Virus record (IMG/VR): IMGVR_UViG_3300037882_001770
Span: 62,001 to 126,000 of that record
Direction: 5' to 3' (one strand)
Length of the DNA: 64,000 bases
Shown: positions 7,458 through 33,178 of the stretch, piece by piece
How the letters are laid out: each line of letters starts with the position of its first letter
Position numbering within the stretch: the stretch's first letter is position 1
Made by a program: the position numbers and the translations under genes
Notes under the pieces: model-generated
Told to the model about the DNA's origin: nothing
Database searches by the model: none
The model's input: the letters and a program-made list of their open reading frames with translations, nothing else

Positions 7458-7516
7458 AGGTGTAGTTCGCGGGACGGCAATCCCCAACTACTCTAACGCT
7501 TTGAAGGAGCATCAGC
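7449..7516 (+). promoter_or_regulatory. Late promoter plus structured leader of GIY-YIG homing endonuclease
   Basis: TATAAATA, then stems TAGTT/AACTA, GGGA/TCCC and GCT/AGC (the last around the SD); same architecture at 48721-48789. Confidence 0.75.
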
Positions 7517-18775: not shown

Positions 18776-19077
18776 TGGCAAACCCACCTCCACCATATGA
18801 AAACATAACAGGCATCAGTCGCACTGTCATGAAAGACAATGCACAAGAGACTGTTACTAACTATAACGGAAATGCTCGTCCGGGCGAAATGACTGTAAAT
18901 CCAAACACCAGTCAAATTTATATAGGCAATACTAACGGCAATTTAAATTTAGTAATCAGTAGCAACGGATCAAATTTGTTTGTGGGCAATGCCAGAGTAT
19001 CAAATACAGTTCCGGCGGGTTTTTATCAAATGTATTACAACCCCACGACCGGTGAAGTAATTTATTACCAGCCCTAA
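18775..19077 (+). CDS. Hypothetical virion protein
   Basis: 100 aa with ARPGEMTVNPNTSQIYIG motif, a type seen in fibre/decoration proteins. Confidence 0.5.
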   Translation: MANPPPPYENITGISRTVMKDNAQETVTNYNGNARPGEMTVNPNTSQIYIGNTNGNLNLVISSNGSNLFVGNARVSNTVPAGFYQMYYNPTTGEVIYYQP

Positions 19078-20225
19078 ATCTTAAACCAACTTAGATATTG
19101 ATGTATTTTGTCAGTAACTGACTGCCAATCGCCCATTACGGGTTGCCGAAACAGTCTAGCACTAGGATACCACGGACTTGAATCTCGACCAAGCAACCAT
19201 CTCCAATCGACTGCATAGTTGTTGAGCATGATCCAGGTAGGGCGACCGAGGGCGCCACTTAAGTGTGACACCGCAGTATCAACTCCAACTACCACATCAA
19301 GATTTTGAATCAATGCTGCTGTGTCGGCCCAACTGCCAATAGTACCTGGAAACAAACTAACCCCAAGGTTAGCTAATTGATCAGACTCGTTGCTGTTGCA
19401 ATCAATTTGCAAATTGATCCATTCGTAGCTTGGATTTTTTTCAATCAGTTGTAGCATGCAATTAAACGGCAATGCCTTGTGTTGATTAATCCACGAATCT
19501 TTTCGGCCACTCCAACAAAAACCAACTCGTAATCGTTTTTTTGCACCAAGATGATCTTGCCAAGCCTTGGCTAAATTTGCATCAGGTGTGATATACTGCA
19601 AAGGAGCCAACAAGTTGTGTAACGTTACTCCTAGCACACCAGGAATACTCATAATAGGAGTCCAATAATCAAAATGTTCAGGAGTATCGCCGGGTTTTAT
19701 GAACTGCTTGACAATCGGGCTTCCGTGTATAAGAGGCACCATGCTAGGATCTAAATCCATTATAACATTTGCGCCCAACGCCTGCAAAGATAATAAAAAT
19801 CTTAAGAATTGTATATTGTCACCGTGGCCCTGCTCACCAATTACCAGTATGGTTTTTTCATTTAGGTCCTGTCCGGCCCACCTGGGTTGATCATATGCTG
19901 GTAAAAGTCCTGCTAGGTGCTCGTACTGCCATCGAGACTCATATGCCGGCCAGCCGTTTGCATAATCTCCTTGCAACAAATAACAAACAGCCAAATTAAA
20001 TCTTGCAGTAATGTTGTCAGGAGCCAACTGAATAGCTCGTTGTAAAAACGGAACAGCTCCAACCGGGTCGCCGACTTCTCTCAACACATTTCCATAATTA
20101 TTAAACGCACCAAAAGACAATCTATCCTGAGTGAGTGCCTGTGCGTAACAGGTCAGTGCTTGCTCGGGGCGGTGATCGGCCCTTGCTTGGTTTCCTTGCT
20201 CTATCAGAAGTTCAATATCATTCAT
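19074..20225 (-). CDS. TPR-repeat plus GT-B (GT9-like) glycosyltransferase
   Basis: N-terminal TPRs (AFNNYGNVLRE, ARFNLAVCYL), EQGHGDNIQF, LDVVVGVDTAVSHLSGALGRP; start reassigned to MNDIELL. Confidence 0.8.
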   Translation of the reverse strand: MNDIELLIEQGNQARADHRPEQALTCYAQALTQDRLSFGAFNNYGNVLREVGDPVGAVPFLQRAIQLAPDNITARFNLAVCYLLQGDYANGWPAYESRWQYEHLAGLLPAYDQPRWAGQDLNEKTILVIGEQGHGDNIQFLRFLLSLQALGANVIMDLDPSMVPLIHGSPIVKQFIKPGDTPEHFDYWTPIMSIPGVLGVTLHNLLAPLQYITPDANLAKAWQDHLGAKKRLRVGFCWSGRKDSWINQHKALPFNCMLQLIEKNPSYEWINLQIDCNSNESDQLANLGVSLFPGTIGSWADTAALIQNLDVVVGVDTAVSHLSGALGRPTWIMLNNYAVDWRWLLGRDSSPWYPSARLFRQPVMGDWQSVTDKIHQYLSWFKI

Positions 20226-20271
20226 TGCTATATTTAATTTGATGCGCCGACCCTGTAGATTATCTGGTTGC

Positions 20272-20370
20272 CATAAATACTTGTCAACGTAATACTGCGT
20301 TTTATGCGGGTAATAAACCCCCCGCGTAGCGGCTAGAACCCGCATGGGACTTCTTTAAGGAGAAAACAAA
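20272..20370 (+). promoter_or_regulatory. Late promoter and GC-rich structured 5' leader
   Basis: CATAAATA at 20272; ATGCGGGT (20304) can pair with CCCGCGT (20321) or ACCCGCAT (20338); AAGGAG SD. Confidence 0.5.
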
Positions 20371-21156
20371 ATGGGTCGTCCACTTAAAATTAAAAAAATT
20401 ATCGAAACCGGCGGTAACGGTAAAGATATCGGTTTCAATGCATTTGATCAATTGACAGCACCAACATTGCCAATTGGCGGCACTATGGAATCTAGCATGT
20501 TTCTTGGTGTAGTCGGTGGTGTTCAACCAACTACAATTGCTACGGCAGCATATCCGATTGTTAAATGCGAAGTTAACATTACTAACAGCGCCAGCGGCCA
20601 AACTCCTGGACTAATCATCCGTCAAAAAGGTGCTCGCAAATTCATGGTTGCTACAACAACCGCAATTGATCCTGAAAATGCAGTACCAAACTCAACTGTA
20701 GCGTTGCGTATTGCTGTAGTTGGCGATACAGACTGGTCGGCTATGGGTGCTCCGGTAGGATATGGTATTGGCACAATCTTTACACCAACAGCAGCATCAG
20801 CAGCGGGCACAACCGGCACAGCACAGGAAGTAGGCACATGTGTACTAACTAGTGACCTAACACCAACTGCTGGCAATATGAGCATTAGTTTCTTTGCTGG
20901 CGCATCTGATTCTACTGAACAGGCAATTAGCAAATTAACTAACAAGTTCTTGAGCGACTTTACAGGTGGTGAAACAGGCGGCAGTGCCAATACAGGCGAT
21001 GTTTGGAATCCTGCACTAGTAGCGCAAAACGTTCGTTATGATGCCAATTTCTTCAGCGACGAAGGCACAGAAATCAAGTCTGGTGCCGAAGCAGAAACAT
21101 TTGCCAACACAACTGGCCAATTAGATCTTGCTATTGTTGAAAAATACACTTCGTAA
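20371..21156 (+). CDS. Hypothetical virion structural protein
   Basis: 261 aa, Thr/Ala/Gly-rich, MGRPLK start, IIRQKGARKFMV; strong SD. Confidence 0.55.
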   Translation: MGRPLKIKKIIETGGNGKDIGFNAFDQLTAPTLPIGGTMESSMFLGVVGGVQPTTIATAAYPIVKCEVNITNSASGQTPGLIIRQKGARKFMVATTTAIDPENAVPNSTVALRIAVVGDTDWSAMGAPVGYGIGTIFTPTAASAAGTTGTAQEVGTCVLTSDLTPTAGNMSISFFAGASDSTEQAISKLTNKFLSDFTGGETGGSANTGDVWNPALVAQNVRYDANFFSDEGTEIKSGAEAETFANTTGQLDLAIVEKYTS

Positions 21157-21172
21157 TTTGTAGTAACCCAAG

Positions 21173-21204
21173 ATCCTTACAGCTATATACTGTAAGGATT
21201 TTTT
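21173..21204 (+). terminator. Hairpin with T-run, likely terminator
   Basis: ATCCTTACAG-7-CTGTAAGGAT followed by TTTTT. Confidence 0.65.
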
Positions 21205-21792
21205 ATGACCACAGCATTTGTACTAGGCAACGGCATTAGCCGAAAAGCAATTTCACTACTGCACCTGCGGCAATACGGTCCTATCTATGGATGTAATGCA
21301 TTATATCGCGATTTTACCCCCGATGTATTGGTGGCAACCGATCGCCCAATATCGGCACAGATACAAGACAGTGGCTACCCGATGAAAAATAAATTCTATA
21401 CCAGACGCCCGTTTACAGGGCACGGCGCACTACCAGTGCCAACAGATTATTTTGGTTACAGCTCTGGTCCTATTGCTACAGGGATAGCCGCCCTGGATGG
21501 ATACAGCACCATATATCTTATTGGATTTGACATGGGGCCCAGCCCCACACAAGGATTCAACAACATATATGCCGACACTGAATTTTATAGAACATCAACA
21601 TCAAACCCAACTTACACAGGAAATTGGATCAAACAGCTATGTCATGTCATGACTGACTTTCCGACCATAAAATTTATAAGAATCATGGGCCCAACTAGCT
21701 CAACAATAAAAGAGTTTGACTCACTTAAAAATTTGGAATATCTAGATTTGTCCACTTTTGCAGACCGCATAAATAATCAAAAGGATCTTTAA
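21205..21792 (+). CDS. CstII/Maf(DUF115)-like glycosyltransferase-fold protein
   Basis: AFVLGNGIS, YGCNALY, PDVLVATD, SSGPIA...GYSTIYLIGFDM. Confidence 0.65.
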   Translation: MTTAFVLGNGISRKAISLLHLRQYGPIYGCNALYRDFTPDVLVATDRPISAQIQDSGYPMKNKFYTRRPFTGHGALPVPTDYFGYSSGPIATGIAALDGYSTIYLIGFDMGPSPTQGFNNIYADTEFYRTSTSNPTYTGNWIKQLCHVMTDFPTIKFIRIMGPTSSTIKEFDSLKNLEYLDLSTFADRINNQKDL

Positions 21793-22392
21793 ATGGCTAG
21801 TTATAAGAACATCAGCGGCAATTGGTATATCACAGTGGAAAACGGTGTTGGCACGATCTATGTTGACGGTAACTTGGATGTGACCGGTAATATTACCTAC
21901 GTCAGCGAACTAGCGGTCAATGATGCATTTATTATTGTGGCAGCAAACAATACAGGCACAGTAACCAGCATGGGCTTGATTGCTCAAAAAACAGACACAG
22001 CATTTGCCGGATTTAGATTCAACACTATTACCAGCGAATGGGAAGTTAGTCCCAGTGTGGCCGAAGACGGCTCTCCAATTTCCCCATACACTGGCATAGT
22101 TACAGGAAACGTCGCAGTTGGTGGATCAAATACACAGGTACAGTTCAACAATAACGGTAGCTTTGGCGCAACTGGAAATTTGACATTCAATTCGGTAACC
22201 AACACACTGACCCTAGGCGGCCCACAAGTTTTTGCAAATATTATAACCACCCCGTCGACTGTGGTTGATTCAGTTAGTTTGTACCATAAAGGAGTCGGAC
22301 AGGGCGACACTGGACTATATGTAGTAAGCCCAACGGTTGATTCAGAATTGATCAGTTCGACTCAAGCTAAAAAGTTTTCAATTATATTTTAA
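21793..22392 (+). CDS. Tail-fibre-associated protein
   Basis: GNLDVTGNITY, GGSNTQVQFNNNGSFG fibre motifs. Confidence 0.6.
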   Translation: MASYKNISGNWYITVENGVGTIYVDGNLDVTGNITYVSELAVNDAFIIVAANNTGTVTSMGLIAQKTDTAFAGFRFNTITSEWEVSPSVAEDGSPISPYTGIVTGNVAVGGSNTQVQFNNNGSFGATGNLTFNSVTNTLTLGGPQVFANIITTPSTVVDSVSLYHKGVGQGDTGLYVVSPTVDSELISSTQAKKFSIIF

Positions 22393-22401
22393 GGAATAAT
22401 C

Positions 22402-22716
22402 ATGGCAATAACATCAGCACTAATCACAACATCGGCGGCCAACGTATATGCCAGCGTGGGCAATACCGCGGTAACCTGGCTATCAATTACTAATTATGGT
22501 GCAGCCAATGCAACAGCCAATGTGCATGTGGTACCATCAGGCGGCACAGCTAACGTTCAAAATCAAATTATTTCGGTTATTGAAATTGTAGCAGGTGACA
22601 CCTACCAAATCTATGCCGGTAATGAAAAATTGTTATTGGGTAACGACGACACAGTTCAAGCGGTGGCCAACGCAAACACTTTACTAAATGCAGTGACAAG
22701 TTTTACATCGGTGTAA
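22402..22716 (+). CDS. Small beta-rich virion protein
   Basis: 104 aa in the fibre cluster, with SD. Confidence 0.5.
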   Translation: MAITSALITTSAANVYASVGNTAVTWLSITNYGAANATANVHVVPSGGTANVQNQIISVIEIVAGDTYQIYAGNEKLLLGNDDTVQAVANANTLLNAVTSFTSV

Positions 22717-23114
22717 TGGGAAATTTTGTAAAAAATCGACAATTACAGTCAGGTAGTACTGGCGTGGTACTGCCTACTGGAAGTTCGGCGAATCGACCTG
22801 ATACCGCAGTGTTTGGCATGATACGTTATAATACAGATATTGGATTTTGTGAATTTTATAACGGTAGTATTTGGCAAAACATGGGTGTTGGCGGAGTGGT
22901 TAGCTACACAGTTGATGATTTTACAGGTGACGGCAGTACCACGGTGTTTACTATGAGTTTGGCTGAAAGTATTGCTACTCAACTCATAGTATTTGTAGGA
23001 TCAATTTATCAAATAGCTGTGACGAACTACACAGTTAATGGCGGTTTTGACATATCTTTTACTTCTGCTCCACCAGCAGGGATACCAATTAACGTTATTC
23101 ATACTGAAAATTAA
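22716..23114 (+). CDS. Short fibre/baseplate-associated protein
   Basis: LPTGSSANRP...GMIRYNT module plus FTGDGSTTVFT domain. Confidence 0.6.
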   Translation: MGNFVKNRQLQSGSTGVVLPTGSSANRPDTAVFGMIRYNTDIGFCEFYNGSIWQNMGVGGVVSYTVDDFTGDGSTTVFTMSLAESIATQLIVFVGSIYQIAVTNYTVNGGFDISFTSAPPAGIPINVIHTEN

Positions 23115-23147
23115 ACAGATAAATATCCTATCATAGGGATATAATAT

Positions 23148-24206
23148 ATGGGAATTAGCTTTGTTGCAGGATCGATGCTTAATAGCGACCTCCAACGAGA
23201 TTCTGATCTTGCATTCAATACTAACCTACTTTATATTGACGTCAGCGGCAATGCGGTAGGCATCAACACAACTACTCCTGCATCTGCACTTGAAGTTGTT
23301 GGCAATATAACAGTTGGTAATGTGCTGATTTCTAACACCGGAAATATCAGTGCTGGCAACGTTTGGATTAACAATTTAAGCAATCCAGTAGCAAATTCAG
23401 ATGCAGCTACTAAATTTTACGTTGACTCGACTAGTGCAAATGTGCTAGGTAATTTAGCAATCAGCAATACCACAATTACAACAAATCTAGCCGATGGAAA
23501 TATTACTTTAACATCCACTGGCAACGGAATTACGCAAGTGTCGGGCTCGGCTGGATTTGGAATTCCTGTTGGGAATACCTCGCAACGCCCAAGTGTGCCA
23601 TTGGTTGGCACACTGCGTTATAATTCGTCTACTAACTTTTTAGAAATATATGATGGCAGCGGATGGGTATCTGCTGCTGGAACCACATCTGCAGTCACAA
23701 ATCAAACTATCGAGCCCGACGGAGGGTCAGCAGTTTATACGCTAGACCAATCAACTACAGCCGTAAGTATTTTGGTCACGATCAACGGTATCAGTCAAAC
23801 ACCCGGAATTGACTACACTGTGGCCGCAGATCAAATTACTTTTACAACAGTTCCGTTGAGCTCTGATATTGTGCAGGTTCGTTTTATTGCCACCACTACC
23901 ACAGTAACAGAAATTACAAATAGTAGCGGCAATACATCGGTCCAAGCAACCGACGCCAGTACCATTAATTTTGAAATCAATTCAGCATTGGCAGCACAAA
24001 TAACCAGCGCCAAGATTGTTAATCTTGCTAGCAGTCACAGTTTACAACTACCAGCATATACCACAGCAAATGCCACAGCATTGGCCAATGTGGCCACAGG
24101 CCAAGTCATATACGTGTCCGACGGCAATGCCGGACAACCGTGCCTAGCGGTATACAGCGCCGGTGCTTTTAAACGAATTGCCCTGGGCAACACAATTTCT
24201 ACCTAA
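23148..24206 (+). CDS. Tail fibre protein
   Basis: NPVANSDAATKFYVD, IPVGNTSQRP...GTLRYN, GQVIYVSDG modules. Confidence 0.7.
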   Translation: MGISFVAGSMLNSDLQRDSDLAFNTNLLYIDVSGNAVGINTTTPASALEVVGNITVGNVLISNTGNISAGNVWINNLSNPVANSDAATKFYVDSTSANVLGNLAISNTTITTNLADGNITLTSTGNGITQVSGSAGFGIPVGNTSQRPSVPLVGTLRYNSSTNFLEIYDGSGWVSAAGTTSAVTNQTIEPDGGSAVYTLDQSTTAVSILVTINGISQTPGIDYTVAADQITFTTVPLSSDIVQVRFIATTTTVTEITNSSGNTSVQATDASTINFEINSALAAQITSAKIVNLASSHSLQLPAYTTANATALANVATGQVIYVSDGNAGQPCLAVYSAGAFKRIALGNTIST

Positions 24207-24268
24207 AACCCTCTCCAAACAGCATTATTCTCTGTTTGCCATAAATATGGTATAAATGGAGACTTGAC

Positions 24269-27200
24269 ATGGCCGTTACACGAATAAAGAATAATCAGAT
24301 TACTGATGCAACTGTTGTTGCTAGTGCAAAACTAGTTGACTACTCGATTACCGCTGGAAAAATTGCTAATAATTTAACCTACGGTAGTGATTTAACGATC
24401 GCCGGTAACCTAACCGTTAACGGAAATACAACCACAATTGACACCACTGTTGTAACAGTCGAAGATCCAATGATCAGCTTGGCCTACAACCAATCAGGAA
24501 GTCCTACACTGGACATTGGTTGGATCGGGGTGCGCGGCACTGCAAACAATGTGGCCTTTATCTGGGACGAAAGTGCCTTAGAATTTGCGGCAGCCTTTAC
24601 CACAGACGATATTGGTAACACCACTATTTCTCTTATTGGCTATGCCAATCTCCATGTTTTAAACGCCAACGTTGCTGGCAATATCTCTATAGGTGGCAAC
24701 GTTGACATTACTGGCAACATTACAAGTATCAACGTAACTGGCAACATTACCGGTGGCAATCTTAACACTCCGGGTCTAGCCAGCGTAGTTGGCAATGTGA
24801 TTGGTGGCAATATCAGTACAGCTGGATTGATTACAGCGGTTGGCAATATCAACTCGGGTGCTAACATTGTGGCAACTGCCAATGTAATTGGTGGCAATAT
24901 CAGCACAGCTGGATTGATTACAGCCGCAGGAAATATTTTAACAAGCGGTATAGTTACTGCTACGGGCAATGTCACTGGTGGTAATTTACTCACCGGTGGT
25001 CTGATTAGTGCCACAGGTAACATCAATTCAGATGCCAATATTGTGGCAACTGCCAACGTGATCGGTGGCAATGTTTCAACTGCTGGATTGGTAACTGCTA
25101 CAGGTAATGTCACAGGTGGTAATTTACTCACCGGCGGTCTGATTAGTGCCACGGGCAACATCAACGGTGGCAATTTGTATTCAGCTGGTACTGTTACCGC
25201 AGTTGGTAATATTACTGCACCGTATTTTATTGGTAATATTATTGGTAATGTTGATGCAGCAGGCGCTAACACACAGGTACAATTCAACGACAGTGACATC
25301 CTAGCTGGCTCAGCTGGATTTACATTTGACAAAACAGCAAATCTAGTAACAGTCACTGGCAACATTCAAGGCGGCAATTTAAGAACAGCAGGACTAGCGT
25401 CAGTAACAGGTAACATCAATTCAGATGCCAATATTGTGGCAACTGCCAACGTGATCGGTGGAAACATCTCAACTGCTGGATTGGTAACTGCTACAGGTAA
25501 TGTCACAGGTGGCAACTTGATTACCACAGGTGTTGCCACAGTAACAGGTAACATCAATTCAGATGCCAATATTGTGGCAACTGCCAACGTGATAGGTGGC
25601 AATATTTCAACAGCTGGATTGATAACAGCCACAGGAAATGTAACCGGTGGCAACTTGATTACCACAGGTGTTGCCACAGTAACGGGTAACATCAATTCGG
25701 GCGCCAACGTGATAGTGGCAGCCAACGTGATTGGTGGAAATATTTCAACAGCTGGTCTAGTGACTGCAACTGGAAACATTACCGGTGGCAACTTAAGATC
25801 GGCTGTGATAACTTCACCAAGTAGTGATATAACCATTACCAGTGATTCTGCAAATGCCAACGTTGTTATTACTCCTAAAGGCACCGGTAACGTAGTTCTT
25901 AACAATGCTTACATCAACAATTTAAGAGATCCTATACTAGCACAAGATGCTGCATCTAAACAATATGTTGATGATGCAGTGTCTTCGGGTATCACAATTC
26001 ATACTCCGGTACGAGTTGAGTCTCCAACAGCTCTCAACGGAACTTATGCGCAGGGCGGAACTACTGCTACGGTGACCAGCACAGTAGCAGGTAACACAGT
26101 GGTGTTTGGTTCTGCAATCAGTCCTCAAGTAAATGATCAATATTGGTTTACCAGTTCGTTCAGTGGTATTCTAGCAAACACACCATACTTTGTTGTAAGT
26201 GCACCAAACACCAGTGCTGCAGTGTTGAGTATCACCTACAGTGGTGCTCCGGTCACAGACATTACTAGCGCAACTGGGTTAACTCAACCAGTGAGAATTA
26301 ATTCTGGTGTTGGTGCTACATTGACCAATGCTGGTGCAAATGCAACATTGGTTATCGACGGCGTTACTCTAAGTAACACCAACCGTGTGTTGATCTATCA
26401 ACAGGCCAATGCAGTACACAACGGTGTATACGTGGTTAGTGAAGCTGGTAATGCTACCACTGCCTGGCAGTTGACACGTAGTGATGATATGAACACCTAT
26501 GCTCCTGATGACCTCAACGGATTAGATGCAGGTGATTATTTCTATGTTCAAGAAGGTGACACTGGTGCAGGCGAAAGTTATGTGATGACCGCTCCGGTTG
26601 GACCAACAATCATTGGTTATGCCAATCTAACATTTACACAGTTTAGCGCCAGTCAAGTTTACTCAGCCAATACGAGTGCTGGTTTGAGTTTGATTGGTAC
26701 AGTATTCTCAGCTAAAGTTGACAACAACACTACAGCATTTGACGGCGGCGGCAATATCATTGTTAAAGCCGGCGCAAATTTAACAACTCCAAACATTGGT
26801 GCTGCAACCGGAACAAGTCTAAGCGTAACCGGCAACATCACCGGTAGTAATGTTGTAGCTACTAATGGTTTTTTTGGCAACGTAAATCTAACAGGCGATA
26901 TTGTTGTTAACAGCTTAACTGCAAATACATTTGTTAGTGCCACTGGTAATGTGATCGGCGGTAATATCAGTACAGCTGGACTAGTAACCGCTACAGGAAA
27001 TGTAACTGGTAGCAACTTGATCACAGGTGGACTAGTAACTGCTACTGGTAACGTAACAGGCGGCAATTTAATTACTGCAGGGTTGATTACAGCCACGGGT
27101 AATGTAACCGGTAATAACGTTACTGCACTCAATCAACTTGGTGCAGCAACTCTGAGTCTAAGTGGCAACGTAACTTCTGCACTCAATGTAACTGGAAACA

Positions 27201-29917
27201 TTGCTGGTGGAAACATCTCCACAGCCGGATTAGTAACTGCCACAGGTAACATCAATTCGGGCGCTAACATCGTGGCCACTGCCAATGTGATTGGTGGAAA
27301 CATCTCAACTGCTGGACTAGTAACTGCCACAGGTAACATCAATTCGGGCGCTAACATCGTGGCCACTGCCAATGTAATTGGTGGTAACTTGATCACTGCA
27401 GGTGTTGCTACGGTAACAGGTAACATCAATTCAGATGCCAATATTGTGGCAACCGCCAATGTAATTGGTGGTAATATCTCAACTGCTGGATTAGTAACTG
27501 CCACAGGCAATGTCACAGGTGGTAACTTGATCACTGCAGGTGTTGCTACTGTAACAGGCAACATCAATTCGGGTGCTAACATCGTGGCCACTGCCAATGT
27601 AATTGGTGGAAACATCTCAACTGCTGGATTAGTAACTGCCACAGGTAATGTCACCGGCGGCAATATCAACACAGCCGGATTGGCTAGCGTCACAGGCAAC
27701 GTAATTGGTGGTAATATCTCAACTGCTGGATTGGTCAATGCCACAGGCAATATCACCGGCGGTAACATAATTGGAAACACCAGTGGTAAATTTGGTAATA
27801 TTGTAATCTCAGGCGATGACATCACCGACACAAACGGTCGAGTCAATATCAACACCGCCGGAGCCGATGTTGACTTTGCAGTCAACGGTGACACAGTAGC
27901 CAATGTGTTTTACGTTGACGCCGGAACAGGCACAGCTAGCTTTGGTACAGCTACACAAACTACCAATGCACTGGTATCATTTAATACACCAACATCAGTG
28001 TTGATGCCAGTGGGTAATACACTGCAACGTCCAAGCGTGGGCGTCACAGGTATGCTGCGTTTTAACACCACTGATAACAATTTTGAAGTATACGATAACT
28101 CAGCCTGGACCGCAGTTGGTGTTCCGGAGTTTACAGTTATTGCAGACAGTCAGTTCAATGGTGACGGATCAACTGTTGCGTTTACAATCCTTGCAGATCA
28201 AACAACCAATAGCTGTATTGTAAGTATCAACGGTGTGGTACAGATTCCAGTTACTGCATACTCTGTGTCTGGCACTACTTTGACATTTACAGAAGCTCCG
28301 CTAGCAGGCGACGTCATTGATGTACGTCAAATTACTAGTACTACCACAGTTACCGCTCTCAGCAACAGCAGCGGCAATGCCGAAGTCAGCGTGAGTGATA
28401 CTGATTCAATAGTAAACATTCGTGGCAATTTAGTTCCAATTGCTAGTAACACATACAGCCTTGGAAATGCAACACACAGCTGGGATAGTTTGTATGTAGC
28501 TGGTAATACAATTTATCTAGGCACATTACAGCTCAAACAAGCAAGTGCAGACACCTTTGCAGTTTACACCGCTGATGGTATAACTGCAGCCAACATTGAC
28601 GTGGGCAGTATTGACGTTCAGTCTATCACACAAGGGACCAGTGCAATTGGTATTGCTGGCAACAACGGCAATGCTTATATCACAGTGGGCGGAACAGCCA
28701 ATGTGGTTGTAACAGCAACCACTGGACAGTTTGTAACTGGAATACAGTCGGTTACTGGCAACATCACTGGCGGCAACATCAGTACAGCGGGACTAATAAC
28801 AGCCGTGGGTAACGTAACGGGCGGCAATATCAGAACCGGCGGACTAATCAGCGCTACTGGCAACATAACCGGTGCCAACTTGAGCATAACAGCAGATGCA
28901 GTAATTACCGGAAACTTAACAGTTAACGGTACCACTACCACAATCAACTCCAACACAATTACCACTAACGACAAGGCCATTACATTAGGTAACAATCAAT
29001 CAACTGGGTCTGCGTTGGATGGTTCTGGAATTGATGTTGGTAGCAACTCACTGGCAACATGGAAATTCAACAACGCAACTACTAGCTGGCAAAGCAATAT
29101 TGGTATTACACCAAGTGCCAATGCTACACTTTCCTTGGGCGGCACAAGTAATTATTGGGGAACTCTGTATGCCAATGCAGTTATAGTGGCCACAACAGCA
29201 GGAGTAACAGGCAATATCACCGGCGGAAATATATTAACAGCTGGATTGATCAGTGCAACTGGCACTATTACTGGCACAGGTAATATCACCGGCGGCAATA
29301 TCAACACAGCCGGATTGGCTAGTATTACTGGTAATGTAATTGGTGGTAATATCTCAACTGCTGGATTGATCAGTGCAACTGGCTCCATTACTGGTGCAGC
29401 TATAACAGGCTCAAGCCTAACAGTGGGCACCGGTAACGTAACAGCGGGCAACATTGTCAATGGCAATGCCAATGGAGTGGGTAATATTGGTAGTTCAACC
29501 ACATACTATAATACTGTATTTGCCAAAGCAACTTCGGCACAATATGCCGACCTGGCAGAAAAATATGTAGCTGATGCCGAATATGCTCCTGGTACGGTAG
29601 TGATATTTGGCGGCTCAGCAGAAGTCACTGTTAATGCGACAGATGCGGACCGTAGGGTTGCTGGGGTAGTATCTACAAATCCAAGCTACATCATGAACGG
29701 TGGGTTAGAAGCCGACTACGTGGCAACTGTGGCGTTAACTGGACGTGTACCGTGTTTTGTAATTGGCCCAGTTAAGAAAGGTGACATGATAGTTGCTGCT
29801 GGGTTAGGCCGTGCTAGAGCCGAGCAAGATCCACGAGTTGGTACTGTAATCGGTAAAGCACTTGAAGATTTTGATGGTATCGAAGGCACAATTGAAGTTG
29901 TGGTAGGTCGATTCTAA
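24269..29917 (+). CDS. Long tail fibre/adhesin (1882 aa) with repeat stalks and C-terminal chaperone-type domain
   Basis: Dozens of TGN(I/V)TGGN(I/L)xTAGL repeats; ends with YADLAEKY...VALTGRVPC...IGKA...IEVVVGR. Confidence 0.85.
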   Translation: MAVTRIKNNQITDATVVASAKLVDYSITAGKIANNLTYGSDLTIAGNLTVNGNTTTIDTTVVTVEDPMISLAYNQSGSPTLDIGWIGVRGTANNVAFIWDESALEFAAAFTTDDIGNTTISLIGYANLHVLNANVAGNISIGGNVDITGNITSINVTGNITGGNLNTPGLASVVGNVIGGNISTAGLITAVGNINSGANIVATANVIGGNISTAGLITAAGNILTSGIVTATGNVTGGNLLTGGLISATGNINSDANIVATANVIGGNVSTAGLVTATGNVTGGNLLTGGLISATGNINGGNLYSAGTVTAVGNITAPYFIGNIIGNVDAAGANTQVQFNDSDILAGSAGFTFDKTANLVTVTGNIQGGNLRTAGLASVTGNINSDANIVATANVIGGNISTAGLVTATGNVTGGNLITTGVATVTGNINSDANIVATANVIGGNISTAGLITATGNVTGGNLITTGVATVTGNINSGANVIVAANVIGGNISTAGLVTATGNITGGNLRSAVITSPSSDITITSDSANANVVITPKGTGNVVLNNAYINNLRDPILAQDAASKQYVDDAVSSGITIHTPVRVESPTALNGTYAQGGTTATVTSTVAGNTVVFGSAISPQVNDQYWFTSSFSGILANTPYFVVSAPNTSAAVLSITYSGAPVTDITSATGLTQPVRINSGVGATLTNAGANATLVIDGVTLSNTNRVLIYQQANAVHNGVYVVSEAGNATTAWQLTRSDDMNTYAPDDLNGLDAGDYFYVQEGDTGAGESYVMTAPVGPTIIGYANLTFTQFSASQVYSANTSAGLSLIGTVFSAKVDNNTTAFDGGGNIIVKAGANLTTPNIGAATGTSLSVTGNITGSNVVATNGFFGNVNLTGDIVVNSLTANTFVSATGNVIGGNISTAGLVTATGNVTGSNLITGGLVTATGNVTGGNLITAGLITATGNVTGNNVTALNQLGAATLSLSGNVTSALNVTGNIAGGNISTAGLVTATGNINSGANIVATANVIGGNISTAGLVTATGNINSGANIVATANVIGGNLITAGVATVTGNINSDANIVATANVIGGNISTAGLVTATGNVTGGNLITAGVATVTGNINSGANIVATANVIGGNISTAGLVTATGNVTGGNINTAGLASVTGNVIGGNISTAGLVNATGNITGGNIIGNTSGKFGNIVISGDDITDTNGRVNINTAGADVDFAVNGDTVANVFYVDAGTGTASFGTATQTTNALVSFNTPTSVLMPVGNTLQRPSVGVTGMLRFNTTDNNFEVYDNSAWTAVGVPEFTVIADSQFNGDGSTVAFTILADQTTNSCIVSINGVVQIPVTAYSVSGTTLTFTEAPLAGDVIDVRQITSTTTVTALSNSSGNAEVSVSDTDSIVNIRGNLVPIASNTYSLGNATHSWDSLYVAGNTIYLGTLQLKQASADTFAVYTADGITAANIDVGSIDVQSITQGTSAIGIAGNNGNAYITVGGTANVVVTATTGQFVTGIQSVTGNITGGNISTAGLITAVGNVTGGNIRTGGLISATGNITGANLSITADAVITGNLTVNGTTTTINSNTITTNDKAITLGNNQSTGSALDGSGIDVGSNSLATWKFNNATTSWQSNIGITPSANATLSLGGTSNYWGTLYANAVIVATTAGVTGNITGGNILTAGLISATGTITGTGNITGGNINTAGLASITGNVIGGNISTAGLISATGSITGAAITGSSLTVGTGNVTAGNIVNGNANGVGNIGSSTTYYNTVFAKATSAQYADLAEKYVADAEYAPGTVVIFGGSAEVTVNATDADRRVAGVVSTNPSYIMNGGLEADYVATVALTGRVPCFVIGPVKKGDMIVAAGLGRARAEQDPRVGTVIGKALEDFDGIEGTIEVVVGRF
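24700..25800 (+). repeat. Coding tandem repeat tract 1 in the long fibre (approximate limits)
   Basis: Near-identical copies of GGTAACATCAATTCAGATGCCAATATTGTGGCAACTGCCAACGTG. Confidence 0.8.
26820..27770 (+). repeat. Coding tandem repeat tract 2 in the long fibre (approximate limits)
   Basis: Includes an 87-nt-period duplication starting at 27239 and 27326. Confidence 0.8.
29447..29541 (+). repeat. 95-bp block identical to 32034-32128
   Basis: GGCAACATTGTCAATGG...GCAACTTCGGCACA compared base by base. Confidence 0.9.
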
Positions 29918-29931
29918 ACAAAAACTCTGCC

Positions 29932-29963
29932 AAAATAGGACTCCTACGGAGTCCTATTTTTTT
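29932..29963 (+). terminator. Intrinsic terminator, potentially bidirectional
   Basis: AAAATAGGACTCC-TAC-GGAGTCCTATTTTTTT. Confidence 0.85.
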
Positions 29964-29993
29964 GACTAAATATTTCATGCTAATGGATATATC

Positions 29994-31112
29994 ATGGGAT
30001 TAACTAGACTTCGGGCCGAGCAGATATCAGACATAGACTATAAACAGGCTGTGCGTGTGATTGCGGTGGCCAATGTCACATTGATAGGAGGAGCGCCTAG
30101 CCAAGTCGACGGCGTGGCTGTTAGCATAGGTGATAGAATTTTAGTAAATGGTCAACTTACTGGAAGCCAAAACGGGATTTATCAAGTACAAACTGTAGGG
30201 TCAGGGTCAACCGGTACGTGGATTCGTGCTGCAGATACCAATACTACCGGTGAATTGGAAGCGGGGACTATTGTTATGGTCACCGAAGGCACAGTTTATA
30301 AAGATACGCAGTGGAAGTTGACCACCAACAATCCTATCATAATCGGGACCACAAGTCTTACCTTTGAGCAGAATTCGGCTTTTGCTTTTGGTAATATATT
30401 TGCTAATAGCACCGCAGTTCTGGCTAACACAGTGGGGGATGTTCTTACTCTAACAGCCGGCAACAACATACAAATTACTGGTAACAATACTAACAAATCT
30501 GTGTCTATCGGAGTTACAGGCCTTAGCATCAACTCGATAGCTAACGGTACGTCTAACGTAAATGTGGTTAGTGCAGGTGGCAACGTCACAGTGGGGGTGG
30601 CTGGTACCAGTAATGTAGTAGTGGTTTCTGCATCGGGCATGAACATCTCCGGAAATCTTATTACTACCGCAGTTGCGTCAGACTTGGTTCCTAGTGTTGA
30701 TATTGGATTTAGTTTGGGCAACGTCACCAACCGGTGGGCAAACTTATATCTATCAGGCAATACAATTTATCTTGGTAATAGTATTATTACTGAAACCGCC
30801 AATGGTGACATTGTTATTGAAAACGCTGGCAGTTTTGCGGTGCCAGTCGGAAACACCGCACAACGAAGCGAAGTTCAGGGAGCTATACGATTCAATACCA
30901 CCATTAACGCATTTGAAACCTACGACGGCGCTGGGTGGAATACTGTGGCATATGGCAATGCCAGCGATTTTCCATTTGGAGAATACGGCGATTTATCTGA
31001 AAATAACAGCGACGCATTTGGAATTAGCACTGTAGAATCATTTGACTGTAACAACGAAGGCACTATTGTGGTTGTCAATTTGGGTGCCGGGGAAGCGTAC
31101 CTGGGTGCATAA
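29994..31112 (+). CDS. Tail fibre protein
   Basis: DYKQAVRV...VDGV...GDRILV...QNGIY domain; VPVGNTAQR...GAIRFNT module. Confidence 0.7.
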   Translation: MGLTRLRAEQISDIDYKQAVRVIAVANVTLIGGAPSQVDGVAVSIGDRILVNGQLTGSQNGIYQVQTVGSGSTGTWIRAADTNTTGELEAGTIVMVTEGTVYKDTQWKLTTNNPIIIGTTSLTFEQNSAFAFGNIFANSTAVLANTVGDVLTLTAGNNIQITGNNTNKSVSIGVTGLSINSIANGTSNVNVVSAGGNVTVGVAGTSNVVVVSASGMNISGNLITTAVASDLVPSVDIGFSLGNVTNRWANLYLSGNTIYLGNSIITETANGDIVIENAGSFAVPVGNTAQRSEVQGAIRFNTTINAFETYDGAGWNTVAYGNASDFPFGEYGDLSENNSDAFGISTVESFDCNNEGTIVVVNLGAGEAYLGA

Positions 31113-31133
31113 ATATAAGATACAGGGGAAATC

Positions 31134-32516
31134 ATGCCAACAGTAGTGCAATTTAGACGTGGAAACACCACACAAAATAACAACTTCACCGGAGCAATTG
31201 GTGAGATATCCGTGGACACCACTCTGAATGTTCTACGAGTTGCAGACGGATCCACAGCTGGCGGATTTGCATTAGTTGGCCAATCTGCATCACAAACAAT
31301 AACAAATAAAATATATCAAGGATCGATTGTAAGTGTTACTGGTAATATCACAAGCGGAAATTTGCTAGTCAATACAGACGCAGTTATTACAGGAAATCTA
31401 ACAGTAAATGGCACAACAATCACAGTAAACAGTAACACTGTCACAATTAACGATAAGTTTATCAATGTTGCTAATAATGCTAGTACAAGTACATTGGCCG
31501 ATGGCGGTGGTATTGGAGTTGGCCCAGTGGGCGCAGAATATGCCAAGTTAGAGTATGATCAGGCAACCAATACATGGAACACTAATATAGGTATCTCTAT
31601 AACTGGTAATCTTAGTGCAACTGGCAACATCACAGGCGGTAATTTTGTAGGAACACTTAATGGGTCAGGCGCAAATGTAACGGCTATCAGTGCCACAAAT
31701 ATTTCTAGTGGTACTTTGAACCAGGCAAGATTGGCTAACTCTGCTGTAACATTGGGAAGCACATCACTGGTACTAGGTGCCACAGTCACAACAATAGCTG
31801 GCTTAACTAGTATAACAAGTAATACATTTGTTGGTGCATTAACTGGGGCGGCTACCACAGCCGGTACGGTAACCACAGCGGCGCAACCAAATATTACTAG
31901 CGTTGGTACGCTAACGACTGTCAGCGTAACAGGCAATGTCACTGGCGGTAATGTTCGAACAGCTGGATTGATCAGTGCAACTGGCTCCATTACTGGTTCT
32001 AGTTTAACAGTAGGCACAGGCAACATAACCGCAGGCAACATTGTCAATGGCAATGCCAATGGAGTGGGTAATATTGGTAGTTCAACCACATACTATAATA
32101 CTGTATTTGCCAAAGCAACTTCGGCACAGTACGCCGACCTGGCAGAGATGTATGTAGCTGATCAAAATTATTTGCCTGGCACCGTGGTGATATTTGGCGG
32201 CTCACACGAAATTACATCCGCAACGCATACACATAGTGCGCAAATTGCTGGAGTAATCTCAACCAATCCAAGTTATCTAATGAATAGTGCGCAAGAAGGA
32301 GCACATGTCTTGCCAGTAGCATTAACTGGCCGTGTTCCTTGTCAAGTAGTTGGTACAATAGCCAAGGGCGATAGATTGGTTGCTAGTAATTTACCTGGAG
32401 TTGCAACAGCATTAGACATGTTGCAATATCAACCCGGCTGTATCATTGGCAAGGCTATAGAAACATACAATTCTTTAGACGTTGGCGTTATTGAAGTGGT
32501 CGTTGGAAGATTATAA
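31134..32516 (+). CDS. Tail fibre protein with Mtd_N-like N-terminus and chaperone-type C-terminus
   Basis: VQFRRGNTTQNNNFTGAIGEISVDT; YADLAEMY...LTGRVPCQV...IEVVVGR. Confidence 0.75.
   Translation: MPTVVQFRRGNTTQNNNFTGAIGEISVDTTLNVLRVADGSTAGGFALVGQSASQTITNKIYQGSIVSVTGNITSGNLLVNTDAVITGNLTVNGTTITVNSNTVTINDKFINVANNASTSTLADGGGIGVGPVGAEYAKLEYDQATNTWNTNIGISITGNLSATGNITGGNFVGTLNGSGANVTAISATNISSGTLNQARLANSAVTLGSTSLVLGATVTTIAGLTSITSNTFVGALTGAATTAGTVTTAAQPNITSVGTLTTVSVTGNVTGGNVRTAGLISATGSITGSSLTVGTGNITAGNIVNGNANGVGNIGSSTTYYNTVFAKATSAQYADLAEMYVADQNYLPGTVVIFGGSHEITSATHTHSAQIAGVISTNPSYLMNSAQEGAHVLPVALTGRVPCQVVGTIAKGDRLVASNLPGVATALDMLQYQPGCIIGKAIETYNSLDVGVIEVVVGRL
32034..32128 (+). repeat. 95-bp block identical to 29447-29541
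   Basis: Direct comparison. Confidence 0.9.
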
Positions 32517-33178
32517 TGCAAGCGCGGTATCGACAAGAATACCCAGGTGAATTTGTTGTGTTGCGTACTACATGGTCTGCTGGAAAAAAACAACAAGAGC
32601 GAGAGTGGATTGACAACCCAATTGAAAATCAACATCTTAGTCATCGTGCTGCATGTATAGGAACCAATTCAGACCTAGCAAGACTTGACCACACCCGCTT
32701 ACAAACGCATCGCGGGGGTTTGTTAGGTAGTAAAAAATTGCAAACGTACGGAACCGGAGACATTGCCTTGACCATGCGATTAGACTTTGCAGTTGAGCTG
32801 GATAATGAAAAATTGCAACAACTGAAAGCATTGCAGTACACCGAGCACAATATTGTATATACTAACACCAAGTTGTGTATTGCAAATCCGGGGTCTTGTT
32901 ATCTTATCCCCTACACACCAAATTTACAAACTGAAGTTGTGCCAATATATCTGGCAGCGTTTGACGGCCATCATGAAATTTTTCTAATAGGTTACAACAA
33001 CGATTCCTCAATTGCCAGCACAGGTTGGATTTCTCAGGTGGCCACAATTATGACTGCTTATTCAGGTACAAAGTTTTTTGTAGTTGGAACAAAATCTAAT
33101 ATTCCACCAAGCTGGTTTGATTGTCCAAATGTAGAACACATGGACTATAGGAAATTTATCACATATTGCGACGTTTAG
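32516..33178 (+). CDS. Divergent CstII/Maf-like protein, probable paralogue of 21205..21792
   Basis: AACIGTNSD, QTYG...LDFAV, IYLAAFDGHHEIFLIGY and KFFVVG match the same scaffold. Confidence 0.5.
   Translation: MQARYRQEYPGEFVVLRTTWSAGKKQQEREWIDNPIENQHLSHRAACIGTNSDLARLDHTRLQTHRGGLLGSKKLQTYGTGDIALTMRLDFAVELDNEKLQQLKALQYTEHNIVYTNTKLCIANPGSCYLIPYTPNLQTEVVPIYLAAFDGHHEIFLIGYNNDSSIASTGWISQVATIMTAYSGTKFFVVGTKSNIPPSWFDCPNVEHMDYRKFITYCDV

What the first reader, a model, noticed from the sequence alone, without database searches (positions are those of the whole stretch)
19074..33178. Flagellin-type glycosyltransferase architectures bracket the tail-fibre cluster: possible virion glycosylation system
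Seen: a TPR plus GT-B gene (19074-20225) and a CstII/Maf-like gene (21205-21792) precede the fibre genes. A second Maf-like paralogue (32516-33178) is TAATG-coupled to the last fibre gene. The fibres are very rich in Ser/Thr and carry dozens of N-x-S/T triplets. Established: Maf proteins and the TPR plus GT-B enzyme FlmG are the two known classes of flagellin O-glycosyltransferase, and glycosylated virions are known in some actinophages. Inference: this phage may glycosylate its fibres for shielding, stability or adhesion. A further GT-like gene, a methyltransferase, radical SAM enzymes and a 2OG oxygenase in the window could tailor the sugar.
Basis: partly seen in the sequence, partly recalled or inferred. 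Interest (0 to 1): 0.78.

Follow-up and report, generated by a model that had tools for sequence, protein, structure and literature searches.

The report
Flagellin-type glycosyltransferases in phage virion module
An uncultivated 317-kb jumbo phage carries close structural relatives of both known kinds of bacterial flagellin sugar-adding enzymes, wedged between its capsid gene and its fibre genes, which suggests, but does not prove, that it puts sugars on its own virion proteins.

Summary
The core observation holds. 19074-20225 (minus strand) encodes a TPR + GT-B protein. Its model superposes on Caulobacter FlbA/FlmG (TM 0.87, E 1.8e-25). Its best bacterial homologue (37% identity) lies in a flagellin-flaF-flbT locus. 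21205-21792 encodes a 195-aa minimal Maf/CstII-like domain (Maf 5mu5 Z 12.8, CstII Z 10.5; profile hits CstII at 4e-8). 32516-33178 is its paralogue (hhalign 98%) and overlaps the last fibre gene by TAATG, but it has lost the nucleotide-binding motifs.

Synteny is conserved across many metagenomic relatives. The Maf-like gene always lies between the capsid gene and fibre-like genes. The paralogue lies at the end of the fibre cluster, always followed by a NUDIX gene. The FlmG-like gene is facultative (29/53) and has a conserved sigma70-type promoter. In seven related contigs a sulfotransferase, FkbM methyltransferase, second TPR-GT and GT4-methyltransferase-GT2 cassette sits just upstream of the paralogue.

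Virion-protein O-glycosylation is the best reading (about 0.55). The acceptor (fibres, the 261-aa neighbour or the capsid) and the donor are unknown.

The N-x-S/T excess comes from a 17-residue fibre repeat. The extra GT, methyltransferase and 2OG oxygenase were not found in the window.

The parts
19074..20225 (-). FlmG-like protein O-glycosyltransferase candidate (383 aa): about 3 TPR repeats (aa 1-105) plus a compact GT-B domain of GT9 type (aa about 120-383)
   Evidence: Pfam TPR families and PF01075. AF2 model pLDDT 88. Foldseek against AFDB Swiss-Prot: Caulobacter FlbA (596 aa) TMq 0.87, E 1.8e-25; next best are GT9 heptosyltransferases at TM about 0.5. PDB: SPINDLY/OGT and WaaF. 37% identity to a Rhodovastum TPR-GT in a flagellin-flaF-flbT locus. 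Present in 29 of 53 related loci.
20259..20287 (-). sigma70-type promoter-like site (TTGACA-17-GATAAT, 11 of 12) facing the FlmG-like gene
   Evidence: An equivalent site scoring at least 10 of 12, at the same distance, is present in 27 of 38 distinct intergenic regions of relatives.
20272..20279 (+). CATAAATA late-promoter-like motif upstream of the 261-aa gene
   Evidence: Nine copies in the window against 4.0 +/- 1.9 expected, all co-oriented with and 8-150 nt upstream of a gene start. [CT]ATAAATA sits 92-101 nt upstream of the 261-aa gene in 26 of 38 relatives.
20371..21156 (+). 261-aa Thr/Gly/Ala-rich protein of unknown fold; candidate abundant virion protein and candidate acceptor
   Evidence: No Pfam, PHROG, NCBIfam or PDB match. 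Conserved in 43 of 53 loci. Every locus with the FlmG-like gene also has it. Followed by a strong hairpin plus U-run.
21170..21204 (+). stem-loop plus U-run (terminator/attenuator) ending one base before the ATG of the Maf-like gene
   Evidence: Sequence. RNA fold -15.9 kcal/mol, z -5.85 against shuffles.
21205..21792 (+). minimal Maf/CstII-like (GT42 / MptE-like superfamily) transferase candidate, 195 aa ('GT42a')
   Evidence: AF2 pLDDT 95.6. VIA-align: Maf 5mu5 Z 12.8, CstII Z 10.5, MptE HPPK Z 9.7. Family profile hits CstII/CstI at E 4e-8 over the GNGxS...CN and SSG...GxD motifs. A 36%-identical relative carries Pfam PF01973. 3327 homologues.
21793..32516 (+). cluster of seven fibre-like virion genes (199, 104, 132, 352, 1882, 372 and 460 aa)
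   Evidence: PHROG tail fibre, head decoration and virion structural families; Pfam Mtd_N and Phage_T7_tail. 17-residue repeats. A fibre-like gene lies directly downstream of GT42a in 71 of 72 loci.
32516..33178 (+). 220-aa paralogue of the Maf-like protein ('GT42b') with degenerate nucleotide-binding motifs; start overlaps the stop of the last fibre gene
   Evidence: hhalign 98%, E 2.3e-13. Atlas structural match to a viral MptE-like cluster, TM 0.62-0.64. TAATG overlap. In relatives, NUDIX lies downstream in 79 of 79 loci, a fibre-like gene is the nearest recognised upstream gene in 53 of 60, and the gap is 10 bp or less in 32 of 57.
33175..33657 (-). NUDIX hydrolase gene, convergent with GT42b and overlapping it by 4 bp; invariably linked to GT42b
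   Evidence: Pfam PF00293, E 1.3e-16. 79 of 79 loci. Any role in the system is speculative.

Best explanation
The locus is a phage-encoded cytoplasmic protein O-glycosylation system. It is built from the two enzyme types that bacteria use to glycosylate flagellin, and here it is aimed at virion surface proteins.

1. A FlmG-type enzyme has a short TPR arm for binding the acceptor protein and a GT-B catalytic domain. It is made from its own sigma70-type promoter, probably before the late proteins.
2. A stripped-down Maf/CstII-type catalytic domain (GT42a) is transcribed with the late structural genes, by read-through of the hairpin that follows the 261-aa gene.
3. A motif-degenerate paralogue (GT42b) is translationally coupled to the last fibre gene. 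It probably acts as a non-catalytic or re-purposed partner (adaptor or chaperone) for the fibres.

By analogy with FlmG, Maf, CstII and WaaZ, the donors would be CMP-activated (non)ulosonic acids (Pse, Leg or Kdo type) taken from the host pool. The acceptors would be Ser/Thr of the fibre proteins and/or the 261-aa protein next to the capsid gene.

Shown: the folds and homologies, the motif conservation and loss, the conserved gene order, the conserved promoter-like sites, and the glycan-tailoring cassette in relatives.
Inferred: enzymatic activity, donor, acceptor, timing and biological benefit (shielding, adhesion or stability).
For: FlmG homology:
- Model against Caulobacter FlbA (596 aa, the length and history given for FlmG in PMC7591256): TMq 0.87, rmsd 3.1 A over 406 columns, 24% identity, E 1.8e-25. 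The next hits have E 5e-9.
- The best plasmid-borne homologue has 37% identity over 98% of the length and sits beside flagellin, flaF and flbT.
- FlmG's TPR domain binds the acceptor and its GT-B domain sets the donor (PMC7591256).

Maf/GT42 homology:
- (WaaZ Kdo transferase, TMq 0.59).
- The residues conserved with CstII are invariant in the family: G8-N9-G10-x-S12, C30-N31, S86-S87-G88, G107-F108-D109.

Linkage to virion genes:
- GT42a lies 56-7400 bp after the capsid gene in 53 of 53 loci, and directly before a fibre-like gene in 71 of 72.
- GT42b closes the fibre cluster.
- Late-promoter-like CATAAATA motifs flank the genes.

Independent support:
- Seven related contigs carry a sulfotransferase, an FkbM methyltransferase, a second TPR-GT and a GT4-methyltransferase-GT2 fusion between giant S/T-rich proteins and GT42b.
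- An unrelated 44-kb podovirus has a TPR-GT two genes after its capsid gene, followed by an FkbM methyltransferase and a galT-like gene.
Against: - There is no direct evidence that any virion protein is modified.
- No sugar-nucleotide pathway gene was seen in the 64-kb window. About 250 kb of the genome was not examined.
- The CstII catalytic His188 has no conserved counterpart in the family.
- The window protein itself does not reach any Pfam model.
- The fold is shared with MptE and thiamin pyrophosphokinases.
- More distant homologues of GT42a sit next to the large terminase in T5-like contigs, and next to UvsY/UvsW or gp59 in pelagiphages. Fibre linkage is therefore a property of this clade, not of the family.
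- The FlmG-like gene is missing from 24 of 53 relatives and is transcribed divergently from a host-type promoter. This would also fit a host-directed role.
- GT42b lacks the nucleotide-binding motifs.
Confidence: 0.55

Rival explanations
1. Host-directed glycosylation. The FlmG-like enzyme (and perhaps GT42a) modifies host flagellin or another host surface protein or glycan during infection. The purpose could be to change motility, to block adsorption of competing (for example flagellotropic) phages, or to remodel LPS or capsule. The position inside the virion module would then be incidental.
For: - Both closest characterised relatives act on flagellin.
- The nearest bacterial homologue is in a flagellin locus.
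- The gene is on the opposite strand to the late genes and has a conserved sigma70-type promoter, suggesting early, host-polymerase expression.
- It is facultative in the clade, like an accessory host-interaction gene.
- The GT42 fold also includes LOS sialyltransferases and the WaaZ Kdo transferase.
Against: - The TPR arm is about 105 aa, against 313 aa in FlmG; only FlmG residues 192-590 align.
- GT42a and GT42b are co-transcribed or translationally coupled with late virion genes.
- The gene order with capsid and fibre genes is kept over wide divergence.
- The tailoring cassette of relatives is inserted in the fibre operon.
Confidence: 0.15
2. The two small proteins are not glycosyltransferases. 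They are nucleotide-binding proteins of the MptE / thiamin-pyrophosphokinase kind (pyrophosphoryl transfer to a small molecule), or they have become assembly factors. GT42b would be a fibre assembly chaperone, given its position after the distal fibre gene.
For: - MptE HPPK (Z 9.7) and thiamin pyrophosphokinases (Z 8.5-9.0) are also good structural matches; see also AFDB.
- There is no conserved His at the CstII base position.
- GT42b has lost GNGxS, CN, SSG and the GxD aspartate.
- GT42b occupies the classical chaperone position, overlapping the fibre stop codon.
- In L072 the fibre cluster and GT42b are absent together.
Against: - For GT42a, sequence profiles reach GT42 sialyltransferases (E 4e-8) but no kinase at E up to 10.
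- The best structural match is Maf, with the longest alignment (165 residues).
- The motifs that match CstII are those that hold CMP in that enzyme (the role is from my knowledge of the CstII structures; the alignment is).
- GT42b keeps many invariant charged residues (for example H65-R66-G67-G68, K74, D90, D150, H152, E154). That is unusual for a mere chaperone.
Confidence: 0.15
3. The enzymes glycosylate a non-protein phage component such as modified DNA bases, as many phage glycosyltransferases do.
For: - Pelagiphage homologues of GT42a lie among replication and recombination genes.
- DNA glycosylation is the commonest known role of phage GTs (discussed in PMC12619734).
Against: - A TPR arm is a protein-binding module.
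- No known DNA glycosyltransferase has the GT42/Maf fold (my knowledge).
- No base-hypermodification genes were seen next to the genes.
- The tight linkage is to capsid and fibre genes.
Confidence: 0.05

Closest known systems
FlmG (FlbA) of Caulobacter crescentus, the TPR + GT-B flagellin pseudaminyl/legionaminyl transferase (PMC7591256; bioRxiv 10.1101/2022.03.25.485807)
   Same: Same two-part architecture and same fold over the last TPRs and the whole GT-B domain (TMq 0.87, 24% identity). A bacterial homologue 37% identical to the phage protein sits in a flagellin-flaF-flbT locus.
   Different: - The phage protein has 383 aa, not 596; most of the 313-aa TPR domain is missing.
- It is encoded in a phage virion module with no flagellar or Pse/Leg genes nearby.
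- Acceptor and donor are unknown.
Maf (motility accessory factor, MAF_flag10 / PF01973) flagellin glycosyltransferases, e.g. Magnetospirillum Maf 5mu5 and Shewanella Maf-1/Maf-2 with GlfM (bioRxiv 10.1101/2023.12.03.569772)
   Same: - The 195-aa protein superposes on the central catalytic domain of Maf (Z 12.8, 165 residues).
- Like Maf-2, it has no acceptor-binding domain of its own and so may need a partner.
   Different: - Only the central domain is present (195 aa against about 630).
- The window protein does not reach PF01973.
- There is no GlfM-like four-helix-bundle gene. Instead there is a degenerate paralogue.
- The context is viral.
CstII / CstI (GT42) lipooligosaccharide sialyltransferases of Campylobacter
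   Same: Family profile match at E 4e-8 over the N-terminal GNGxS...CN and central SSG...GxD motifs. Z 10.5.
   Different: - No counterpart of the catalytic His188.
- Shorter, and without the lid and C-terminal parts.
- The likely acceptor is a protein, not LOS.
Virion glycosylation of mycobacteriophages (Freeman et al. 2023, cited in PMC12619734) and virus-encoded glycosylation of Mimivirus fibrils (my knowledge)
   Same: Virus-encoded glycosyltransferase genes placed among structural genes. Some relatives have variable tailoring cassettes.
   Different: - Different enzyme families (flagellin-type OGTs).
- The host is probably Gram-negative.
- The phages are jumbo myoviruses.
- No experimental evidence exists here.
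GT9 heptosyltransferases and the autotransporter heptosyltransferases Aah / TibC / BimC
   Same: The GT-B domain gives the weak Pfam PF01075 and TIGR02193 hits and TM 0.43-0.50 to WaaF, WaaC, Aah and BimC.
   Different: These matches are much weaker than the match to FlmG. They have no TPR arm. They are only the broader superfamily.

Membership tests
FlmG-type flagellin O-glycosyltransferase | N-terminal TPR domain followed by a C-terminal GT-B domain in one polypeptide | tested here: met
   Pfam TPR_1/2/11/12/16/17/19 and PF01075. The model has 7 helices at aa 3-103, then two Rossmann lobes.
FlmG-type flagellin O-glycosyltransferase | Specific homology to FlmG rather than to GT-B enzymes in general | tested here: met
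   AFDB Swiss-Prot top hit is Caulobacter FlbA, E 1.8e-25, TMq 0.87; the next hit has E 5e-9 and TM 0.49. Equating FlbA with FlmG rests on the same species, the same 596-aa length and the flbA papers cited for flmG in PMC7591256. That identity is an inference.
FlmG-type flagellin O-glycosyltransferase | Encoded with flagellin / flaF / flbT or Pse/Leg biosynthesis genes | tested here: not met
   There are no flagellar or nonulosonic-acid genes in the window. The nearest bacterial homologue does meet this feature.
FlmG-type flagellin O-glycosyltransferase | Binds flagellin through the TPR domain and transfers Pse or Leg from the CMP-sugar | not testable with these tools
   Needs a binding assay and reconstitution.
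Maf (MAF_flag10, PF01973) flagellin glycosyltransferase | Central MAF_flag10 catalytic domain | tested here: inconclusive
   The fold matches Maf 5mu5 residues 272-513 at Z 12.8. The window protein gives no PF01973 hit. 18 of 67 family members give weak hits, and one 36%-identical relative gives a clear hit.
Maf (MAF_flag10, PF01973) flagellin glycosyltransferase | Flanking N- and C-terminal domains (including TPR in Maf-1), or a GlfM partner, for flagellin binding | tested here: not met
   The protein is 195 aa and all of it aligns to the central domain. No GlfM-like gene was recognised.
Maf (MAF_flag10, PF01973) flagellin glycosylt­ransferase | Essential catalytic aspartate (D247 / D261 in Shewanella Maf-1 / Maf-2) | tested here: inconclusive
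   D109 is invariant and D46 nearly so in the family. No residue-level alignment to Maf was available.
GT42 sialyltransferase (CstII / CstI) | Conserved CMP-binding motifs | tested here: met
   HMM alignment to CstII residues 1-34 and 120-189. These residues are invariant in the family.
GT42 sialyltransferase (CstII / CstI) | Catalytic base His188 | tested here: not met
   No invariant His in 40 close or 67 diverse family members. In the HMM alignment His188 faces a Thr/Gly position. The alignment is loose at that point.
MptE-like 6-hydroxymethylpterin pyrophosphokinase | Homology to archaeal MptE closer than to the glycosyltransferases of the same fold | tested here: not met
   MptE scores Z 9.7 over 130 residues, against Maf at 12.8 over 165 and CstII at 10.5 over 174. 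The family profile finds no MptE or TPK chain at E up to 10.
Active Maf/GT42-type transferase (applied to the paralogue 32516-33178) | Retention of the GNGxS, CN, SSG and GxD motifs | tested here: not met
   In the profile-profile alignment these positions read G-(S/T)-x-x-D, T-G, variable and G-Y-N.
Phage virion glycosylation system | Glycan covalently attached to a virion protein, dependent on the phage GT genes | not testable with these tools
   Only genomic linkage could be tested.

The most novel reading that the evidence does not exclude
A widespread clade of uncultivated jumbo phages decorates its virion with (non)ulosonic-acid glycans using captured flagellin-glycosylation enzymes.

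The system would be three-part:
- an early-expressed FlmG-type enzyme with a shortened TPR arm re-targeted to a phage protein;
- a minimal Maf-type catalytic domain;
- a catalytically degenerate Maf paralogue, coupled to the distal fibre gene, that serves as the acceptor-specificity factor. This would be a viral analogue of the Maf-2/GlfM tripartite system.

Sub-lineages would further sulfate and methylate the glycan.
Probability: 0.15. Interest if true: 0.85.

Novelty: new variant of a known kind. Interest (0 to 1): 0.64.

Why it matters
Protein glycosylation of phage particles has so far been shown in only a few actinophages, where it alters immune recognition. If the present reading is right, three things follow.
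- A very abundant environmental jumbo-phage clade does the same with a different, flagellin-type machinery. The Maf-like gene has thousands of metagenomic homologues.
- The Maf/FlmG enzyme families would have a second natural class of acceptors.
- It would provide very small (195 aa) candidate ulosonic-acid transferases, and a short-TPR FlmG, for glyco-engineering.

It would also bear on how phage fibres avoid proteases or tune adhesion. Finally, it gives a first functional lead for phrog_30607, a large phage family of unknown function.

Tried and rejected
- Near-identical DNA search against isolated phages: no match. Among isolates, only pelagiphage myoviruses carry GT42a homologues.
- Single-sequence and close-family profile searches of PDB sequences for the two small proteins gave nothing, or chance DARPin hits. 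Only the diverse 67-member profile reached CstII.
- The GT domain alone against PDB sequences: nothing.
- The 261-aa protein: no family or PDB match, even with a 24-member profile.
- PHROG scans of the neighbours of two distant GT42a homologues (L085, L009) were uninformative.
- The contexts of two other phage TPR-GT/GT9 hits (MW202713, RHph_X2_30) were not telling.
- I fetched E. coli neuB to look for nonulosonic-acid synthases in the clade. I dropped the plan, because a single-protein query reaches only close relatives and at most 80 loci are returned.
- Walking the 317-kb contig: one look-up was not on record. The other showed baseplate genes upstream of the window.
- The promoter/terminator scanner missed the hairpin before 21205. 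It was confirmed by folding.
Only two models could be made, so GT42b was not modelled here; the evidence for it comes from the Atlas.

Full report
WHAT THE WINDOW IS

The window is part of a 317,493-bp viral contig (JGI 3300037882 Ga0394681_067011 = IMGVR_UViG_3300037882_001770), about positions 62,001-126,000.

It is a jumbo myovirus with T4-type morphogenesis genes:
- portal, 12637-14430;
- prohead protease, scaffold and gp23-like capsid protein, 17355-18551;
- gp15, 33585-34979 (-);
- gp13-like adaptor, sheath (41616-44918), tube and large terminase;
- gp55-like late sigma factor.

The capsid protein is about 62-67% identical to those of PA5oct, GAP32, CBB and related jumbo phages. There is no near DNA match among isolated phages.

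CHECK OF THE OBSERVATION

All three genes exist at the stated coordinates.

The TPR gene is on the minus strand. The mechanical ORF runs to 20345, but homologues are 381-382 aa and a promoter-like site lies inside the extension.

The ATG of 32516-33178 overlaps the TAA of the 460-aa fibre gene. 21793 follows 21792 without a gap.

The fibre proteins have 19-25% Ser+Thr, 9-11% Asn and 11-14% Gly. The N-x-S/T count is above composition only in the 1882-aa protein (68 against 47 +/- 6, z 3.5). There, 39 of the 68 are G-N-[IVL]-[ST] within a 17-residue, 51-nt repeat. They are also irrelevant to O-linking enzymes.

Two radical SAM genes are real. The further GT, methyltransferase and 2OG oxygenase were not found.

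THE TPR-GT PROTEIN IS A FlmG-FAMILY MEMBER

- Pfam gives TPR families and a short but above-threshold GT9 match. NCBIfam gives a weak heptosyltransferase I match over the D-x-D-T-x-x-x-H-L motif region.
- The AF2 model (pLDDT 88) matches TPR-GT41 protein O-glycosyltransferases (SPINDLY, OGT) and GT9 enzymes in the PDB.
- In AlphaFold DB Swiss-Prot one hit stands far above all others: Caulobacter FlbA, 596 aa, E 1.8e-25, TM 0.87 by the query, rmsd 3.1 A, 24% identity, aligned to residues 192-590.
- FlmG is described as a 596-residue Caulobacter protein with a 313-aa TPR domain and a GT-B domain. The papers cited for its earlier genetics are the flbA papers. I take FlbA to be FlmG; this is an inference.
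- At sequence level the best plasmid or chromid homologue (Rhodovastum, 37% identity over 98% of the protein, E 2e-66) lies beside flagellin, flaF and flbT.
- The phage protein is therefore a FlmG homologue with a much shortened TPR arm.

THE 195-aa PROTEIN IS A MINIMAL Maf/GT42 DOMAIN

- The protein itself hits no Pfam family. It belongs to a very large, almost purely viral family: 3327 close homologues, 1012 representatives at the 50% level, and phrog_30607.
- A profile of 67 diverse members finds CstII, CstI and a Pasteurella sialyltransferase at E 4e-8 to 2e-6. The match covers two motif blocks that are invariant in the family.
- Members give weak PF01973 and PF06002 hits. A 36%-identical fused homologue carries a clear PF01973 domain.
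- The AF2 model (pLDDT 95.6) aligns best to the central domain of Magnetospirillum Maf (Z 12.8). Next come CstII (10.5), CstI (9.9), MptE HPPK (9.7) and thiamin pyrophosphokinases (about 9).
- AFDB adds the WaaZ Kdo transferase (TMq 0.59).
- The glycosyltransferases of this fold use CMP-activated ulosonic or nonulosonic acids (my knowledge). The Maf and FlmG papers show Pse, Leg and occasionally Kdo as donors.
- The family has no conserved His at the position of the CstII base.

THE 220-aa PROTEIN IS A DEGENERATE PARALOGUE

- Profile-profile comparison gives 98% probability, E 2.3e-13, over 161 columns.
- The Atlas holds a model that matches a viral MptE-like cluster at TM 0.62-0.64.
- The G-N-G-x-S, C-N, S-S-G and G-x-D motifs are replaced.
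- A different set of charged residues and an inserted H-R-G-G-L-L-G-S-K-K loop are invariant.
- It is either a pseudo-enzyme (adaptor or chaperone) or has a different chemistry.

GENE ORDER AND EXPRESSION SIGNALS

I examined 80 IMG/VR loci holding GT42a homologues (43-67% identity).
- All 53 loci that cover the interval have GT42a 56-7400 bp downstream of the capsid gene.
- 71 of 72 have a fibre-like gene immediately downstream.
- The 261-aa gene is present in 43 of 53.
- The FlmG-like gene is present in 29 of 53. It occurs only in the closer relatives, and only where the 261-aa gene is present. Relatedness confounds this co-occurrence.

In 79 loci holding GT42b:
- the NUDIX gene is always the downstream neighbour;
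- a fibre-like gene is the nearest recognised upstream gene in 53 of 60;
- the gap is 10 bp or less in 32 of 57.

One contig (L072) goes straight from GT42a to NUDIX and gp15. It lacks the fibre cluster and GT42b together. This ties GT42b to the fibres, and ties GT42a and the FlmG-like gene to the capsid-proximal module.

CATAAATA occurs nine times (4.0 +/- 1.9 expected). It is always co-oriented with, and just upstream of, a gene start, including the 261-aa, 199-aa, 1882-aa and 460-aa genes. With a gp55-like sigma factor in the window, it is probably the late promoter.

GT42a has no such motif. It follows a stable hairpin plus U-run, which suggests attenuated read-through from the promoter of the 261-aa gene.

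The FlmG-like gene is preceded by TTGACA-17-GATAAT. An equivalent site is conserved in 27 of 38 distinct relatives. This suggests transcription by unmodified host polymerase, that is, early.

SUPPORT FROM RELATIVES

Seven related contigs carry a gene cassette between giant S/T-rich (RCC1-repeat-like) proteins and GT42b. It consists of:
- a sulfotransferase;
- an FkbM methyltransferase;
- a second TPR-GT (24% identical to the window's over the GT domain);
- a 938-aa GT4-methyltransferase-GT2 fusion;
- in one contig, a protein with an APS-kinase-like P-loop (my reading of its N-terminus).

An unrelated 44-kb podovirus has a TPR-GT two genes after its capsid gene, followed by an FkbM methyltransferase and a galT-like gene.

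These are what one expects of a variable glycan-building locus that serves virion proteins.

WHAT ARGUES FOR CAUTION

- Distant GT42a homologues sit beside the large terminase in T5-like contigs, and beside UvsY/UvsW or gp59 in pelagiphages.
- No donor pathway was seen in the window.
- The fold is shared with kinases.
- The FlmG-like gene could be host-directed.
- Nothing here shows a modified protein.
- I found no paper describing Maf- or FlmG-like enzymes in phages. The library is not exhaustive.

VERDICT

Virion-protein O-glycosylation is the best-supported reading (about 0.55). The acceptor is open: it could be the fibres, the 261-aa protein or the capsid. The donor is also open. Among known systems, this is a new variant of phage virion glycosylation, built from flagellin-type enzymes.

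Noticed in passing
window 18628, 20272, 21768, 24240, 31108, 36816(-), 44961, 48085, 60734: CATAAATA occurs 9 times (4.0 +/- 1.9 expected). It is always co-oriented with, and 8-150 nt upstream of, a gene start. It is probably this clade's T4-type late promoter; a gp55-like late sigma factor is encoded at 2292-3206.
   Followed up: partly
window 24269-29917: The 1882-aa fibre is largely built of 17-residue (51-nt) repeats of the form T-G-N-V-T-G-G-N-I-S-T-A-G-L-V-T-A, in several blocks.
   Followed up: partly
window 29402-29628 and 31989-32215: A 227-nt module, 85% identical, is shared by the 3' part of the 1882-aa fibre gene and the 460-aa fibre gene. This suggests module exchange between fibre genes.
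   Followed up: no
window 6075-6503, 7517-8092, 34979-35458(-), 47138-47575, 48790-49434: Five homing-endonuclease-type genes are scattered through the morphogenesis region: SegE-like GIY-YIG, a NUMOD3 protein, GIY-YIG, TnsA-like and HNH. One lies between gp15 and the next structural gene.
   Followed up: no
window 38315-39205 and 54498-55658: Two radical SAM genes lie inside the structural region. The first is weakly viperin/MoaA-like and is absent from the same position in relative L008. The second is a confident twitch-domain radical SAM with an N-terminal SPASM-like part (NF033640, 217 bits).
   Followed up: partly
window 33175-33657 (-): A NUDIX hydrolase gene is convergent with, and overlaps by 4 bp, the Maf-like paralogue. 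It is its downstream neighbour in 79 of 79 related loci. A role in nucleotide-sugar turnover is conceivable but untested.
   Followed up: partly
L178-L184 (for example L105:2-5706, L183:14511-15350): A sub-lineage carries a sulfotransferase, an FkbM methyltransferase, a second TPR-GT, a GT4-methyltransferase-GT2 fusion and an APS-kinase-like P-loop protein. The cassette lies between giant RCC1-repeat-like proteins and the Maf-like paralogue.
   Followed up: partly
L072 (IMGVR_UViG_3300027749_001410): In this contig the Maf-like gene is followed directly by NUDIX and gp15. The whole fibre cluster and the paralogue are missing. This could be a natural deletion variant or an assembly artefact.
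   Followed up: partly
L006 / L007 (T5-like contigs), 8001-8594 / 7139-7732: A 32%-identical homologue of the Maf-like protein overlaps the start of the large terminase gene in T5-like phages. The family is therefore spread over very different phage types.
   Followed up: no
window 8398-8832 (-): A 144-aa ORF gives a weak hit to the C-terminal domain of arginine-tRNA-protein transferase (PF04377, E 8e-4, below the cut-off).
   Followed up: no
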